Part shown: in pieces, positions 4,111 through 62,080 of the stretch
How the letters are laid out: every line of letters begins with the position of its first letter
How positions within the stretch are numbered: position 1 is the first letter of the stretch
IMG/VR virus record: IMGVR_UViG_3300046616_000314
Location: 310,001-374,000 of that record
Direction: 5' to 3' (one strand)
DNA length: 64,000 nucleotides
The notes under the pieces: generated by a model
What the model saw: the letters and a program-made list of their open reading frames with translations, nothing else
Database searches by the model: none
What the model was told of the DNA's origin: nothing
Program-made: the position numbers and the translations under genes

Positions 4111-5169
4111 ATGGGTTCTTGGAACCATACCTGCATGATTTCTCGGATGCCGGTACTTGATGGAGAGAAAGTGGTTTCGCTATTCCTGGCTCAACAGAGC
4201 CAAGATTATGTGAGCTTCGTTTACGCCACCGCGTTGTGGGCGCCGATCCCGTACGTGGTTCATGGTGAATATAACGATTATGGCGCCGTCCATAATTTCA
4301 CCGGCAAAAGCGACGCGCATCTGGTGGAGTATTTTAAAGAAAATGCTATCAAGATGGGCATTGGTGAAAACGAGTACCACGATATCGAAATCAGTGAAGA
4401 AAAGATTTCGAGTGATGGTCTGGAATTCATCTACAGTGCCGACCACGAAAATCGTCTGCAATTCAGCGACTATCGGAAGAACAAACTTCTGGTGAAACAC
4501 GTCGTAATCCGCGAATCCTTGTACAACAAGGTGCTCTCGGATTACAGTTTCTCGAATTATCAAATGAAGCTGGGCGCCAAGAAAACCGACAGCTACGTTT
4601 CGGAAGATCACGAATACGTTCGGGTCAATTTCGCTTACATCACGCAAGATTGGGAAAACCAATCCAAGAAAATCATCGAACTGCTTCGCGAACAACTCAG
4701 CGAAGAAAAAAATATGTTCGGAATGCGGGATGATTATCTCATTCGGACGTTGACACAAGATATTTACGACCACGAAGCCACGCTTCCTGCGCTACAATGG
4801 TTGAGCGGTGCATCGGGTGGGCGCGGCGAGTCGGCGGGATGGATGCCCCCTCTTGGCTTCTGGTCCAAGTTCAGTGGAATGTCGGACGCTGATGCGGCTG
4901 ACTACCTGTACGAATTCCTGAAGTTTGCGTGGTTCAATCGTTTCGTTTGGGATTCGCGCATCACGTGGTTCCCGTCCTGTAACGCCAGCCAAGATTCCGA
5001 TATGGACGCCCAAGTCTTCCTGGCGAACTATATGAAGGAAGAAGCTCGATCCCTCATCAAGGAACGAATCGAAGACGATTGGGAATTCGATCCCGATCAG
5101 CTTGCGGCGGTCGATTTGCTCGATTACAAGCCCGCCAACTTCGAAGATGCCACCATCGCCGAAGACTAA
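4111..5169 (+). CDS. hypothetical protein
   Basis: 352-aa ORF with RBS, followed by terminator. Confidence 0.8.
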   Translation: MGSWNHTCMISRMPVLDGEKVVSLFLAQQSQDYVSFVYATALWAPIPYVVHGEYNDYGAVHNFTGKSDAHLVEYFKENAIKMGIGENEYHDIEISEEKISSDGLEFIYSADHENRLQFSDYRKNKLLVKHVVIRESLYNKVLSDYSFSNYQMKLGAKKTDSYVSEDHEYVRVNFAYITQDWENQSKKIIELLREQLSEEKNMFGMRDDYLIRTLTQDIYDHEATLPALQWLSGASGGRGESAGWMPPLGFWSKFSGMSDADAADYLYEFLKFAWFNRFVWDSRITWFPSCNASQDSDMDAQVFLANYMKEEARSLIKERIEDDWEFDPDQLAAVDLLDYKPANFEDATIAED

Positions 5170-5317
5170 GGAAAAAGCCCCCGGAACGATCCGGGGGCTT
5201 CTTTCGTTGGTAAGGTGTCGGGTCTGGCTAGGGTCGTGAGTGGTCTCTATGGTGCGGACACAGAGACCACTCACGAATGACCAACAACGCAGGGTCGGGT
5301 CTGGGTGTGCCAGTCAC
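5170..5317 (-). ncRNA. candidate small RNA (~150 nt)
   Basis: TTGACA(5347-5352)-N17-TAAGGT promoter, perfect 15-bp hairpin (5234-5276), two CCAGACCCGAC copies, terminator with U-tract; no convincing ORF. Confidence 0.6.
5172..5204. terminator. bidirectional intrinsic terminator
   Basis: AAAAAGCCCCCGG-AACGAT-CCGGGGGCTTCTTT. Confidence 0.85.
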
Positions 5318-5406
5318 GCTTGCACCTTATAAACCATAGTTCTCTGTGTCAAATTGAATCGGACATAATGTCGCACTTTTTTATTGCATCTGTGAGTATG
5401 CACTGA

Positions 5407-5414
5407 TATAAATA
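5407..5414 (+). promoter_or_regulatory. T4-type late promoter TATAAATA upstream of tRNA
   Basis: Exact T4 late consensus 9 nt before the tRNA. Confidence 0.6.
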
Positions 5415-5423
5415 ATAACTGTT

Positions 5424-5498
5424 GCGGGTGTAGTTCAGTGGTAGAACATCAGTTTTCCAAACTGAGTGTCGCTGGTTCGATCCCAGTCACCCGCTCCA
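5424..5498 (+). tRNA. tRNA-Gly (TCC)
   Basis: GCGGGTG/CACCCGC acceptor stem, D-loop AGTGGTA, anticodon arm TCAGT-TTTCCAA-ACTGA, GGTTCGATCC T-arm, encoded CCA. Confidence 0.95.
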
Positions 5499-5503
5499 AT
5501 CCT

Positions 5504-5743
5504 TCAAATCTTTGGTGGTGCAGGCTTCTTAGGTAGAGGCTTGATGAATGCTGGATTTGTTAGCTTGTAGTGCGTGCCACACGCCGAACAATGGAAATCC
5601 AGAGTACGGAAGATCGCATTCTTGAAATGCAGTTCCGCAACTTGACCACAATCGCAACTGAATTGCAGTGGTCCCATCATCATTTTATATTGGTTAGTAG
5701 CCTCAATCTTGGGTTCTGAACCCGGAAACTTAATAATTTTCAT
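5504..5743 (-). CDS. small zinc-ribbon protein
   Basis: CxC...CxxC (FSCDCG, FHCSACG); TAAATA late-type promoter at 5788-5793. Confidence 0.7.
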   Translation of the reverse strand: MKIIKFPGSEPKIEATNQYKMMMGPLQFSCDCGQVAELHFKNAIFRTLDFHCSACGTHYKLTNPAFIKPLPKKPAPPKI

Positions 5744-5857
5744 TTTTACTGTTGTAACAAAGACCCGACCTTTGTTTCCTTTTGGAATATTTATTGGTCA
5801 GTAAAAAATTAATAAGTCCTCATATTGAATGAATGCGTTCAATCATATAGGGCAAAA

Positions 5858-7900
5858 TTATGTCACAACCAACGTAAACGTGCGGAAATTTGACGTATAA
5901 TTGTCGTTTGCCGCCAATTCGAACGTATAAGTTCCGGCTGATACTGTTCCCGATAGTAGACCGGTTGCTGACAGCGTTGTTCCAGAAGGCAACGTTCCCG
6001 AAGCCAACATATATTTTACGCCTTGACCTTCTGGGTCAGTCGCAGAGAATTGCAAGCTGTATGCGCCTGCGGAAGCCCCTGGCAACGATGCTGCGGTATT
6101 CCAGTTAGGAGCACGGTTTGTGATTTGAACAGTAAAATTATGTGGAGTGATCAAAAACCCATCCGTTGCGGCGATAGTAAAACCATAAAAGGTAGTAGCT
6201 ACATCAACAAATGGTACGGTTCCAGTAATCACACCCGTATTTCCATTGAGTGTCCAATTATTGAAACCCAAATCTACGGAGCGATAGGTAATAGTCAAAC
6301 CATCATCTGATCCTGTATTACACGTAATAGTGATAGGATCACCGCAATTGGCTTGAATAACCGCGCTATTGTTGTACCAAATAGGTCCAGCAGCGCGCTT
6401 AGTACCCAAGAAATCCGATAGGCGAATTTCTCCCGACGTTGGAATTCTTGACGTGTATGGACGATCTACCACATAGAAATTGCCCAAACCAAAAACCTTA
6501 TGTGTATACGGATTCGTGCAGGTTCGGATGCCAAGATCATCGACGTGTTCAGTCGGGCTCAATGTCCAAACGGTACCCGAACGATTATAAACACTATTAT
6601 TTCGATTGTCATAAATCTTGGTGAAACCGACACCGGGTAATGTTCCACCGGCTGCTTTGGTTACTCCAATATTGGTTGTCTGGTTGATTTGATCCCCGGT
6701 GTAGTAAGTAGAATTTCCAGTTACGGGATCAACATATGCAAAAATATTATCGTATGTATACCATTTTGCATATACGGCGCCGGGGAGGGCTGCAACAATT
6801 TGGGCATACGTTTTCGACCCAGTAAGCGTTTGCCAACCATCCGCCGCTGTCAATGCTTGGTGGATAAATTCGATTCCACCAATTTGTTTATAATTTACAT
6901 CAAAACAATATAGACCCATAATGTGATGACATGGATTGCCATTTGTTGTGGTAGGATCGGTTACTTGGCGGCGATCCATAGACATATTGTATGTCGCGCC
7001 GCTTTCTAATTTAAAATATGCCAATTCACCGTAGGATCGTGCCTGGATAATGCTACCCCAGTATTGCCCTTGTGTTTGGATGACTGGTCCCTTGGTCGGG
7101 TCAGTAACATACGTAACCTGCCCGCCGCCGGGTAGGTTTCCACGCGGGACCATCGTTCCATAGTCAGATGATAGATACAATTGACTCGTATGAACAGAGG
7201 GGTGATTACCAGCCTCCGACAGGTACATGGAATCGAATTCCCATTGTGTGTCCACAACGTTGTTCGTAATCTCAGACAGCACGGTCTTGCGATAGTAATC
7301 AGTTAGCTTGGTTGGGGTAGGTCCAACGAATTCTGTTCGAATGTCGCCCAAGCTGATTTTCGGAAGCACTTCGAATTTGAGGATTTCGTAGATGGCATCC
7401 GAAAAGGGAATACCATCAGGGGCTCCCGACCGATTTAGGCGAATACGCGGACGTGCCGCCGGATAATTTTGCGGACAAACCCACAAGCAAAGAATTTCGT
7501 ACCATTCATTGACAACCCACGATGATGTATCAATGAAATCATCGGGCGCGATCAAGCCAGGACCACTAGTCGGACCTTTAATAATAATGTTAGTTGAGTA
7601 ATCAGTGGGCGCATCGGGATAGACAATAAAACCGGGTCTCAACCACGATGTAATACCAGATGACGCCGCAATCTTCCGCATGGTGGCGCGCATAAGATAA
7701 GACCGCCCGGCTTGTGGAACAAATGCATCAATGCCAGTGAGTGATGGACCCTCACCGGTTTTAGAACGGAATACTTGCTGACCATCACCATTAGTTACCA
7801 AATACGACGGATCAATTGGAGTCGGAGACGCCGAATTTTCATTGAATGTCCAATCGTTTACGGACGTGAAGAGGGATGGGTAGTAGGGAGGTAGAGCCAT
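5858..7900 (-). CDS. virion/tail adhesin-like protein with Ig-like C-terminal repeats
   Basis: C-terminal putative Ig repeats (NRAPNW..., GTLPSGTTLSATGLLSGT); ISLGDIRTEF/LTDYYR/IPTSGEIRLSDF motifs; late promoter. Confidence 0.7.
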   Translation of the reverse strand: MALPPYYPSLFTSVNDWTFNENSASPTPIDPSYLVTNGDGQQVFRSKTGEGPSLTGIDAFVPQAGRSYLMRATMRKIAASSGITSWLRPGFIVYPDAPTDYSTNIIIKGPTSGPGLIAPDDFIDTSSWVVNEWYEILCLWVCPQNYPAARPRIRLNRSGAPDGIPFSDAIYEILKFEVLPKISLGDIRTEFVGPTPTKLTDYYRKTVLSEITNNVVDTQWEFDSMYLSEAGNHPSVHTSQLYLSSDYGTMVPRGNLPGGGQVTYVTDPTKGPVIQTQGQYWGSIIQARSYGELAYFKLESGATYNMSMDRRQVTDPTTTNGNPCHHIMGLYCFDVNYKQIGGIEFIHQALTAADGWQTLTGSKTYAQIVAALPGAVYAKWYTYDNIFAYVDPVTGNSTYYTGDQINQTTNIGVTKAAGGTLPGVGFTKIYDNRNNSVYNRSGTVWTLSPTEHVDDLGIRTCTNPYTHKVFGLGNFYVVDRPYTSRIPTSGEIRLSDFLGTKRAAGPIWYNNSAVIQANCGDPITITCNTGSDDGLTITYRSVDLGFNNWTLNGNTGVITGTVPFVDVATTFYGFTIAATDGFLITPHNFTVQITNRAPNWNTAASLPGASAGAYSLQFSATDPEGQGVKYMLASGTLPSGTTLSATGLLSGTVSAGTYTFELAANDNYTSNFRTFTLVVT

Positions 7901-7981
7901 ACCAATATTTAGCCCAAATTTTCGTTGACAAAAATTTTCAAAGTCGATAGTGGTAGGTCGGATTAACAGGAGGATTTGTTA

Positions 7982-61750: not shown

Positions 61751-62080
61751 CTAGTGCAAGTATACGTGCAAGAACTTCATCTTGAACATCGCCGCCATGT
61801 CTTCATCGGGAAAAGGAATGACGTATGTAATAGGGTGCTTTACTTTAGTACCATTGATTCGAGCCAACTGGTCTGCAAAGGCTGTCTCGCCCGTATCGGG
61901 TTCTTCGATGCCCAGTGATGCCAGAACCTCTTCGGACTGTTCTGGGGGCACTTCAGCAATCTCTACACCCCGTTCGTCGCACCATTCTTGCACGGTGCGA
62001 TAAAGCTCGCGACGTTTCGCCCAACCGTTGAAGTGGGTCAGCTTGAATACTTGTTCTTCTGTGAGATAGAGATAAAACAT
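61751..62080 (-). CDS. FKLKW-family small protein
   Basis: EWCDERGV ... PDEDMAAMFKMKFL. Confidence 0.8.
   Translation of the reverse strand: MFYLYLTEEQVFKLTHFNGWAKRRELYRTVQEWCDERGVEIAEVPPEQSEEVLASLGIEEPDTGETAFADQLARINGTKVKHPITYVIPFPDEDMAAMFKMKFLHVYLH

What the first reader, a model, noticed from the sequence alone, without database searches (positions are those of the whole stretch)
5170..5793. Candidate antisense sRNA with two seed copies matching a hairpin loop in the neighbouring gene's leader
Seen: a minus-strand unit with TTGACA-N17-TAAGGT (5352-5324) and a terminator (5172-5204) gives a ~150-nt RNA. It has a perfect 15-bp stem (5234-5248/5262-5276) flanked by two CCAGACCCGAC copies (5217-5227, 5294-5304). 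The leader of the zinc-ribbon gene (5504-5743, minus strand, late TAAATA promoter) forms AACAAAG-GUCGGGU-CUUUGUU (5756-5776) about 13 nt before the AUG. Its loop and 3' arm (GGUCGGGUCU) are exactly complementary to the sRNA motif AGACCCGACC. Knowledge: loop-initiated pairing is typical of antisense and type I toxin-antitoxin control. Inference: an early sRNA controls a late zinc-ribbon protein across the tRNA gene; alternatively the motif is a protein-binding site.
Basis: partly seen in the sequence, partly recalled or inferred. Interest (0 to 1): 0.72.

Follow-up and report, generated by a model that had tools for sequence, protein, structure and literature searches.

The report
Candidate small RNA in a megaphage
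A 561-kb uncultivated phage has a promoter-to-terminator unit that looks like a 146-nt small RNA whose duplicated motif can pair with the leader of the neighbouring late gene, but there is no expression data and no conserved relative, so it remains a reasonable, unproven prediction.

Summary
The window lies in a 561,116-bp phage record.

On the minus strand, TTGACA-N17-TAAGGT (5352-5324) and a strong terminator (5203-5172) bracket about 146 nt. This stretch has no plausible ORF, an 18-bp hairpin and two CCAGACCCGAC copies.

- TTGACA/TAnnnT sites are 6.5-fold enriched in intergenic DNA.
- nTAAATA is the most enriched upstream 8-mer. It precedes the zinc-ribbon gene in all 19 usable of the 22 related loci.

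The 21-nt leader hairpin is a lineage-specific insert. It sits between a conserved AAAGGAAAC purine tract and the AUG.

Scanning the RNA body against 907 leaders puts the neighbour's leader 2nd by perfect match and 4th by helix energy. First place goes to a ribonucleotide-reductase leader that hits the same seed.

Weaknesses:
- No RNA run holds the region, there is no homologue of it, and no covariation can be tested.
- The -10 spacing is atypical for this phage.
- The terminator is shared with the convergent 352-aa gene.
- The same stretch may simply be the late mRNA's 3'UTR.
- A 10-mer complement alone is not rare (P about 0.09).

Type I toxin-antitoxin is not supported. Verdict: a plausible orphan sRNA, or 3'UTR element, of a known kind.

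The parts
5347..5352 (-). -35 hexamer TTGACA of the candidate sRNA promoter
   Evidence: Seen. TTGACA-N16-18-TAnnnT occurs 68 times in the genome, 38 of them in the 8.6% that is intergenic.
5324..5329 (-). -10 hexamer TAAGGT, 17 nt after the -35; predicted start near 5317
   Evidence: Seen. It keeps T1, A2 and T6. The same TAAGGT at 17 nt follows a TTGACA upstream of tRNA-Met/Phe at genome 4773. The family prefers 16 nt, in 27 of 37 cases, so this is an atypical member.
5172..5317 (-). Predicted 146-nt noncoding RNA, either independent or the 3' end of the late transcript
   Evidence: Fold -71.8 kcal/mol, z = -8.0. No ORF of 30 aa or more starts and ends within it on the minus strand. No Rfam family reaches threshold.
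5294..5304 (-). Seed copy 1, CCAGACCCGAC. AGACCCGACC (5302-5293) gives 10 bp with the leader.
   Evidence: Hybrid -19.0 kcal/mol, opening cost 5.05.
5232..5278 (-). Central hairpin, 18 pairs (15 perfect), 7-nt loop
   Evidence: The stem sequence is unique in the genome.
5217..5227 (-). Seed copy 2, CCAGACCCGAC, in the single-stranded linker before the terminator
   Evidence: Opening cost 1.09 kcal/mol and 9-bp hybrid -15.7. Four further pairs (5227-5230 with 5758-5755) appear in the read-through fold.
5172..5203 (.). Bidirectional intrinsic terminator, shared with the + strand 352-aa ORF that ends at 5169
   Evidence: On the minus strand, 14 pairs then UUUUU. On the plus strand, 11 pairs then CUUUCGUU.
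5424..5498 (+). tRNA-Gly(UCC), lying between the RNA unit and its proposed target on the opposite strand
   Evidence: ARAGORN. Rfam tRNA 70.6 bits. TATAAATA at 5407-5414 lies just upstream.
5504..5743 (-). 79-aa four-cysteine zinc-ribbon gene, the proposed target
   Evidence: 66 homologues. C30, C32, C52, C55 and N63 are invariant, and the N-terminus MKII.FP is conserved, which confirms the start codon. The AF2 model has pLDDT 83 and four strands. No Pfam, PHROG or PDB match.
5756..5776 (-). Leader hairpin AACAAAG-GUCGGGU-CUUUGUU. Positions 5770-5761 are complementary to the seed.
   Evidence: unique in the genome. It is absent from all homologous leaders: the TAAATA-to-start distance is 44 nt here against 22-41 nt elsewhere.
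5788..5795 (-). AATAAATA promoter-like motif of the zinc-ribbon gene
   Evidence: nTAAATA 8-mers are about 10-fold enriched in the 100 nt upstream of genes. The motif is present upstream of this gene in all 19 usable of the 22 related loci.

Best explanation
The 5172-5352 minus-strand unit most likely specifies a structured noncoding RNA of about 146 nt. I propose it is made from a host-sigma-70-type promoter, and probably also as the tail of the late transcript that reads through the antisense of the tRNA gene. In both cases it ends at the intrinsic terminator.

Its duplicated, largely single-stranded motif (C)CAGACCCGAC(C) can pair with GGUCGGGUCU. That sequence forms the loop and the top of the 3' arm of a 21-nt hairpin in the leader of the adjacent TAAATA-driven zinc-ribbon gene.

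The hairpin sits between the conserved purine tract AAAGGAAAC and the AUG. Folded, it leaves the tract about 12 nt from the AUG; unfolded, 33 nt.

My proposal is that pairing melts the hairpin, pulls the ribosome-binding tract away from the start codon, and so lowers or delays synthesis of the protein. A ribonucleotide-reductase leader with an 11-nt match to the same seed may be a second target.

Shown here:
- the sequence elements themselves;
- the promoter-family statistics;
- the fold energies;
- the genome-wide ranks;
- the lineage-specific origin of the hairpin.

Inferred only:
- that the RNA is made;
- that the pairing occurs in cells;
- the direction of any effect.

The confidence given (0.22) is for the whole statement, that is, an independent trans-acting sRNA that regulates the neighbour. 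That some minus-strand noncoding RNA ends at 5172 I put at about 0.6. That the motif-leader pairing is functional, in trans or in cis, I put at about 0.3.
For: Transcription signals:
- The promoter and terminator bracket 146 nt with no gene; the next minus-strand ORF is 1.6 kb away.
- 56% of TTGACA/TAnnnT sites are intergenic against 8.6% expected.
- TAAGGT at 17 nt is used again upstream of a tRNA cluster.

Structure and pairing:
- The fold has z = -8.0.
- Seed copy 2 is cheap to open, at 1.09 kcal/mol.
- Co-folding the two RNAs gains 11.9 kcal/mol.

Genome-wide ranking:
- The longest perfect complement across 908 leaders ranks the neighbour 2nd.
- Contiguous-helix energy ranks it 4th of 907, z = -3.8. 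Ranks 2 and 3 use the buried stem.
- Rank 1 in both scans is the RNR leader, on the same seed and 16 nt after a CTAAATA.
- 5 of the 8 genomic copies of the 9-mer are intergenic.

The hairpin as an insert:
- All 19 usable of the 22 homologous loci keep TAAATA at 22-41 nt from the start, while the window has 44 nt.
- L257 and L258 carry the same AAAGGAAAC only 4 nt from the ATG.
Against: - No RNA-seq run was listed, and only DNA contigs could be laid on the region.
- No homologue of the RNA region exists in the phage, viral-contig or metagenome collections, so conservation and covariation cannot be tested.
- Relatives of the target gene have no hairpin, no adjacent tRNA, and no leader-to-flank complementarity above shuffles.
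- The -10 sits at 17 nt rather than the family's 16 nt and lacks the TG extension. The generic scan does not call it.
- The terminator is needed anyway for the 352-aa gene.
- With an unrestricted duplex model the neighbour's leader ranks only 77th and 218th.
- A 10-nt complement to some part of a 3.2-kb flank occurs in 9% of shuffles.
- The leader hairpin is weak, z = -0.9.
- Shine-Dalgarno-like tracts are rare in this phage, which weakens the split-RBS step.
Confidence: 0.22

Rival explanations
1. There is no separate regulatory RNA. The region is simply the long 3'UTR of the late operon (680-aa gene and zinc-ribbon gene), ending at the first available terminator. Pairing between motif and leader, if it occurs, is intramolecular: 5'-3' end pairing within one mRNA that affects its stability or translation.
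For: - No terminator-like site lies between the zinc-ribbon stop (5504) and 5203 on the minus strand.
- In a fold of the 610-nt read-through RNA (5781 to 5172), the leader site pairs with seed copy 2 at probability about 0.99, extended by 4 more pairs.
- The -10 element is atypical.
Against: - A perfect TTGACA with a TAnnnT 17 nt downstream lies just upstream of the structured region, and such pairs are strongly enriched in intergenic DNA.
- Read-through would have to cross 75 nt antisense to an actively transcribed tRNA gene.
- Long-range pairs in a minimum-energy model of a translated mRNA are unreliable.
Confidence: 0.2
2. The three copies of the motif are double-stranded DNA sites for a phage or host DNA-binding protein that acts just downstream of transcription starts, as an operator or roadblock. 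RNA pairing is irrelevant.
For: - The motif begins 16-21 bp after the -10-like element in four places. These are the candidate sRNA promoter, the zinc-ribbon TAAATA, the RNR-leader TAAATA, and the TTGACA promoter at genome 120023.
- It occurs in both orientations.
- The core reads as tandem GGGTC/GACCC pentamers.
- 5 of the 8 exact copies are intergenic.
- A superficially similar repeat-plus-hairpin layout in an unrelated phage (L024) is an iteron-like array.
Against: - One-mismatch variants are not enriched in intergenic DNA: 11 of 106, equal to background.
- Copy 2 (5217-5227) is not near any promoter.
- GGGTC and GACCC are not enriched in upstream regions.
- No candidate binding protein was identified.
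- The numbers are very small.
Confidence: 0.12
3. The pattern is coincidence or neutral history. The terminator belongs to the 352-aa gene, and the hairpin and 11-nt repeat are non-functional spacer sequence at a synteny breakpoint. The 21-nt leader palindrome is a neutral insertion, for example by template switching, whose loop happens to match or was copied from the nearby motif.
For: - My estimate is that such a cluster arises in about 1 of 200 windows, so some are expected in a large scan.
- The 10-mer complement alone has P of about 0.09.
- There is no conservation of anything but the gene and its TAAATA.
- The locus is a rearrangement point relative to the gene order in L234, L235 and L243.
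Against: - The fold z-score is -8.
- A perfect -35 hexamer sits in the right place.
- The same seed gives the best leader match genome-wide at a second TAAATA-driven leader.
- The exact motif is enriched in intergenic DNA.
Confidence: 0.3

Closest known systems
c4 antisense RNA of phages P1 and P7 (Rfam C4)
   Same: It is a phage-encoded RNA of about 77 nt. It represses a nearby phage operon in trans through two short complementary segments: loops a' and b' pair with the target leader, and b' occludes the ribosome-binding site (described in PMC5320573, read).
   Different: - c4 is cut out of the target's own upstream transcript by RNase P.
- It uses two different loop sequences.
- It serves lysogenic immunity.
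- Here there are two identical, mostly linear seeds, a separate promoter, a tRNA gene in between and a large phage in which I did not look for lysogeny genes.
- No Rfam model, C4 included, matched even at E up to 10.
3'UTR-derived sRNAs that share the mRNA terminator (examples recalled from memory: DapZ, MicL, CpxQ; a phage-related case, CisR, appeared, PMC13250501, abstract only)
   Same: The RNA occupies the 3' end of a transcription unit, shares its terminator, and may have its own internal promoter.
   Different: Here the proposed target is the leader of the parental mRNA itself, and a tRNA gene on the opposite strand lies inside the putative 3'UTR.
Type I toxin-antitoxin pairs (hok/sok, tisB/istR-1; from memory)
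   Same: A small RNA is encoded next to a small ORF and has short complementarity to a structured leader.
   Different: - The ORF product is a hydrophilic, conserved zinc ribbon, not a short hydrophobic membrane peptide.
- It has a conserved TAAATA promoter.
- Its family is widespread, and none of the 21 homologue loci examined has such an RNA.
Split ribosome-binding sites in T4 genes 38 and 25 (from memory, not checked here)
   Same: A hairpin between the Shine-Dalgarno tract and the AUG brings the two within working distance.
   Different: In T4 no trans-acting RNA is known to open the hairpin. Here the role of the hairpin is inferred only from its position and from leaders of homologues.
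RcsR1 sRNA of Rhizobiaceae (Rfam RF02552)
   Same: It gives a weak structural match: a stem-loop followed by a terminator.
   Different: The score is 23.2 bits against a gathering score of 60, so this RNA is not a member.

Membership tests
Any Rfam 15 family (including C4 antisense RNA, RcsR1, ctRNA, RNAI) | A covariance-model score at or above the family's gathering threshold | tested here: not met
   Only the tRNA passes. The best sub-threshold hits over 5165-5308 are RcsR1 at 23.2 of 60 bits and His_leader at 22 of 49 bits. C4 does not appear at E up to 10.
Base-pairing small RNA gene (generic kind) | Its own promoter | tested here: inconclusive
   There is a perfect -35 and TAAGGT at 17 nt. 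The family is real in this phage, but its usual spacing is 16 nt with a TG extension.
Base-pairing small RNA gene (generic kind) | An intrinsic terminator at the 3' end | tested here: met
   A 14-pair stem followed by U5 on the minus strand. It is shared with the convergent gene.
Base-pairing small RNA gene (generic kind) | A transcript detectable on the predicted strand | not testable with these tools
   No RNA run was listed for the region. Only two DNA runs hold it.
Base-pairing small RNA gene (generic kind) | An accessible seed complementary to a target translation-initiation region, better than background | tested here: inconclusive
   The neighbour's leader ranks 2nd of 908 by perfect match and 4th of 907 by helix energy, but 77th and 218th with unrestricted duplexes. 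The site ends 17 nt before the AUG, not on it.
Base-pairing small RNA gene (generic kind) | Conservation or covariation of seed and target | not testable with these tools
   No homologue of the RNA region was found. Homologues of the target gene lack the hairpin.
Type I toxin-antitoxin | A small hydrophobic membrane-active toxin peptide | tested here: not met
   The product is a 79-aa hydrophilic protein with four invariant cysteines and a four-strand zinc-ribbon model.
Type I toxin-antitoxin | Toxin and antitoxin RNA co-inherited as a module | tested here: not met
   The 21 homologous loci fetched have no equivalent RNA region and no leader complementarity.
T4-type late promoter (TATAAATA class) | The motif is enriched upstream of genes and conserved upstream of orthologues | tested here: met
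   About 10-fold enrichment of nTAAATA 8-mers, and 19 of 19 usable orthologous loci. Whether transcription from it is actually late was not tested.

The most novel reading that the evidence does not exclude
A megaphage uses one small RNA with a duplicated seed to hold back a small regulon of TAAATA-driven phage mRNAs, at least the zinc-ribbon gene and ribonucleotide reductase. The RNA would be made from a host-type promoter before the TAAATA genes switch on, and again as the tail of the late transcript. It would pair near the 5' ends of these mRNAs. That would be a phage-internal post-transcriptional timer acting on the phage's own genes rather than on host genes.
Probability: 0.12. Interest if true: 0.65.

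Novelty: new member of a known kind. Interest (0 to 1): 0.38.

Why it matters
As far as I know, and this rests on my own knowledge with only a limited literature check, few phage-encoded base-pairing RNAs have been shown to regulate the phage's own lytic genes, and none in phages above 400 kb.

If the prediction holds, it would give three things:
- a compact, testable example of RNA-based timing in a megaphage;
- a defined seed;
- two candidate targets.

Two results stand regardless of the RNA:
- This phage clade uses two clear promoter classes.
- The TAAATA motif is conserved in front of a small zinc-ribbon gene across many huge phages. That is useful for annotating them.

Tried and rejected
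- **Close relatives.** Megablast, blastn and tblastn against GenBank phages found only tRNA matches and proteins at or below 48% identity.
- **Pattern scans.** I scanned viral and metagenome contigs for the stem and for the motif pair. This gave 103 and at least 120 hits. All were unrelated: tandem repeats, CRISPR repeats, and an iteron-like array in L024. None resembled this hairpin.
- **Homologues of the 352-aa neighbour.** They are about 33% identical and have no shared gene order.
- **Sequencing runs.** One DNA run holds the window and is probably its source. A second holds low-depth scraps that do not cover 5170-5375. No RNA run was listed.
- **Miniature transposon with target duplication.** Rejected because the inverted repeat is not at the ends of the repeat-bounded unit, and the element is single-copy.
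- **Replication origin or terminus.** Rejected because cumulative GC skew rises monotonically with no extremum near 315 kb, and the site is a convergent transcription point.
- **Hidden tmRNA or other stable RNA beside the tRNA.** ARAGORN and Rfam found none in the window or genome.
- **Small protein in the spacer.** There are only 30-33-aa GTG frames on the + strand, plus a 160-aa frame antisense to the 352-aa gene.
- **Unrestricted duplexfold ranking.** Uninformative, because long internal loops inflate the background.
- **Function of the zinc-ribbon protein.** No Pfam, PHROG, PDB-sequence or PDB-fold match.
- **Double 12-mer match to the RNA body inside a 633-aa ORF** (genome 479360 and 479384). 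The order of the two segments does not fit one antiparallel duplex, so I treat it as chance.

Full report
**Where the window lies.** The window is positions 310,001-374,000 of a 561,116-bp virus record estimated 97% complete. The genome is 48% G+C and has 36 tRNA genes. One rhizosphere DNA run holds the stretch completely. A watershed run holds low-depth scraps of a near-identical phage. No GenBank phage is close.

**The observation.**
- On the minus strand, TTGACA (5352-5347) is followed after 17 nt by TAAGGT (5329-5324).
- About 146 nt further on there is a 14-pair G+C-rich stem followed by UUUUU (5203-5172).
- Between them lie two CCAGACCCGAC copies (5304-5294 and 5227-5217).
- The copies flank a hairpin whose 15 perfect pairs extend to 18.
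- The predicted RNA folds at -71.8 kcal/mol, against -40.0 +/- 4.0 for shuffles.
- The leader of the 79-aa ORF (5743-5504) contains AACAAAG-GUCGGGU-CUUUGUU (5776-5756). Positions 5770-5761 are the exact complement of AGACCCGACC.

Four corrections are needed.
- The tRNA-Gly(UCC) gene (5424-5498) is on the + strand, and TATAAATA sits 9 nt upstream of it.
- The terminator is bidirectional and begins 3 nt after the stop of the convergent 352-aa ORF.
- The leader hairpin is weak: -5.5 kcal/mol, z = -0.9.
- The generic sigma-70 scan does not call the promoter.

**Is it more than chance?**
- The 9-mer occurs 8 times in the genome against about 3.8 expected. Three copies lie within 553 bp here, and the 11-mer occurs only here.
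- By my arithmetic, an 11-nt repeat inside one 254-nt spacer has P of about 0.008.
- A 9- or 10-nt reverse-complement copy of that particular motif in the 115-nt leader region has P of about 0.001.
- Against this, any 10-nt complement between the leader and 3.2 kb of flank arises in 9% of shuffles.
- The cluster as a whole should turn up by chance in roughly one window in 200.

The pattern deserves an explanation but does not prove function.

**The phage's own promoters.** I made crude gene calls: 908 ORFs covering 91% of the genome.
- The most enriched upstream 8-mers all contain TAAATA, at about 10-fold. For example, 26 of the 33 genomic ATAAATAA copies lie in sense orientation within 100 nt upstream of a gene.
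- TTGACA-N16-18-TAnnnT occurs 68 times, 38 of them in the 8.6% of the genome that is intergenic.
- Aligned, this second family reads TTGACA-N13-TG-N-TAnnnT with a 16-nt spacer in 27 of 37 cases.

'Early' and 'late' remain analogies with T4.

The candidate sRNA promoter has a perfect -35 but a 17-nt spacer and no TG. The identical TAAGGT at 17 nt follows a TTGACA 160 nt upstream of tRNA-Met/Phe. The next minus-strand ORF downstream of the candidate promoter is 1.6 kb away, beyond the terminator. I rate the promoter as plausible, not established.

**The target gene and its leader.** A full HMMER scan found 66 homologues of the 79-aa protein. I fetched 22 loci, of which 21 are distinct. Many come from phages of 417-543 kb.
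- Alignments show invariant C30, C32, C52, C55 and N63 and a conserved MKII.FP N-terminus. This fixes the start codon at 5743.
- The AlphaFold model (pLDDT 83) is a four-strand zinc ribbon. It has no significant Pfam, PHROG or PDB match.
- All 19 usable of the 22 loci have TAAATA 22-41 nt before the start, whereas the window has 44 nt. The other three fell out for these reasons: in L254 and L256 the match starts at residue 17, and L242 duplicates L241.
- The extra length equals the 21-nt hairpin, which no relative has.
- Most relatives carry a purine tract 2-8 nt from the start. L257 and L258 have the same AAAGGAAAC as the window, but only 4 nt from the ATG.

In the window, then, a lineage-specific palindrome has been inserted between the ancestral ribosome-binding tract and the AUG. 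Folded, it leaves about 12 nt between them; unfolded, 33 nt.

None of the relatives has the motif, an adjacent tRNA, or leader-to-flank complementarity above shuffles.

**Pairing.**
- Hybrid energies are -19.0 kcal/mol (copy 1, 10 bp) and -15.7 (copy 2, 9 bp).
- Opening costs are 5.05 and 1.09 for the RNA and 2.6 and 2.3 for the leader. The net is about -11 to -12 kcal/mol, matching the co-fold gain of 11.9.
- I scanned the RNA body against the leaders of all ORFs. The longest perfect complement ranks the neighbour 2nd of 908.
- Contiguous-helix stacking energy ranks it 4th of 907 (-23.4 kcal/mol, z = -3.8). Ranks 2 and 3 use the buried central stem.
- Rank 1 in both scans is an 11-nt match of the same seed, 16 nt after a CTAAATA. 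It lies in the leader of a gene I confirmed as ribonucleotide reductase large subunit.
- With unrestricted duplexfold the neighbour is unexceptional, at 77th and 218th.

**The 3'UTR alternative.** No terminator-like site lies on the minus strand between the zinc-ribbon stop and 5203. Late transcripts may therefore run antisense through the tRNA gene and end at the same terminator. In a fold of that 610-nt RNA, the leader site pairs with seed copy 2 at probability about 0.99, extended by four more pairs. The region may thus be a 3'UTR, an independent sRNA, or both.

**The DNA-site alternative.** The exact 9-mer is intergenic in 5 of its 8 copies. In four places it begins 16-21 bp after a -10-like element. 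This would suit an operator. However, one-mismatch variants show no intergenic enrichment, copy 2 is far from any promoter, and GGGTC/GACCC are not enriched upstream of genes.

**Comparison with known systems.**
- The nearest functional analogue is the c4 RNA of P1 and P7, which uses two short complementary segments against a nearby leader (PMC5320573). No Rfam model matches, so this is not a member.
- Type I toxin-antitoxin fails on the nature of the protein and on its distribution.
- 3'UTR-derived sRNAs and the split ribosome-binding sites of T4 genes 38 and 25 are useful analogies. The T4 cases are cited from memory.

**Verdict.** The feature is a plausible orphan small RNA or 3'UTR element of a known kind, with a concrete, testable pairing model and a possible second target. 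There is no expression or evolutionary evidence.

My probabilities:

| Claim | Probability |
|---|---|
| A minus-strand noncoding RNA ends at 5172 | about 0.6 |
| The motif-leader pairing is functional, in trans or in cis | about 0.3 |
| It acts as an independent trans-acting sRNA, as stated in the best explanation | about 0.22 |

Noticed in passing
Genome 61,790-61,870 (locus L003:1487-1567), outside the window: The leader of a ribonucleotide-reductase large-subunit gene (ATP-cone, Ribonuc_red_lgN and lgC domains) carries TCGGGTCTGGG 16 nt after a CTAAATA. This is the best match in the genome to the candidate RNA's seed: 11 bp, and -32.6 kcal/mol with its flanks.
   Followed up: partly
Whole genome; for example window 7903-7914 upstream of the 680-aa ORF: In 45 of the 100 genes with an nTAAATA motif within 80 nt upstream, the motif ends only 0-9 nt before the start codon. 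Shine-Dalgarno-like tracts are rare (AGGA in 79 of 907 upstream regions). Many of this phage's mRNAs may therefore be leaderless or nearly so.
   Followed up: partly
L246:1762-2095 (IMGVR_UViG_3300021979_000001, 457 kb): A related huge phage carries a bona fide permuted, alphaproteobacterial-type tmRNA gene (Rfam 137.6 and 134.5 bits; tag peptide ANDNVASNMAVAA). It is convergent with, and overlaps the 3' end of, the zinc-ribbon homologue. This mirrors the convergent tRNA-Gly in the window and hints at alphaproteobacterial hosts for this clade.
   Followed up: partly
Genome 119,760-120,030 minus strand (L004:1300-1560): A TTGACA-N16-TAGAGT promoter is followed by a structured leader of about 230 nt (z = -3.2). 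The leader ends in a 15-pair hairpin plus a U-rich tract immediately before the RBS of a 135-aa ORF, which looks like an attenuator or riboswitch-like leader. It contains AGACCCGAC about 20 nt from its 5' end. There is no Rfam match.
   Followed up: partly
About 28 sites across the genome (for example genome 3063, 3625, 5312, 366165, 366654): Many small genes end in a shared C-terminal peptide, roughly (E/D)ED-x-(L/M)FKLKW, followed by a stop that overlaps the next ATG (TTCAAGTTGAAATGGCTATGA). This points to a large paralogous family, or a recurring gene-junction cassette.
   Followed up: no
Window 5362-5372: An 11-bp palindrome, GACATAATGTC, lies between the divergent candidate sRNA promoter and the tRNA-Gly TATAAATA. 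It could be a protein-binding site shared by both.
   Followed up: no
Genome 479,360-479,395 (L007:1502-1537), inside a 633-aa ORF: Two 12-mers that are complementary to the candidate RNA (identical to its + strand DNA) lie 12 nt apart. The chance of this is about 0.003. Their order does not fit a single antiparallel duplex, so it is probably coincidence.
   Followed up: partly
Window 5858-7900 and loci L239, L243: A 620-680-aa protein with a C-terminal He_PIG Ig-like domain sits immediately upstream of the zinc-ribbon gene in three phages. The small zinc-ribbon protein may therefore be functionally linked to this protein, which I take to be a fibre or adhesin because of its Ig-like domain.
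   Followed up: no
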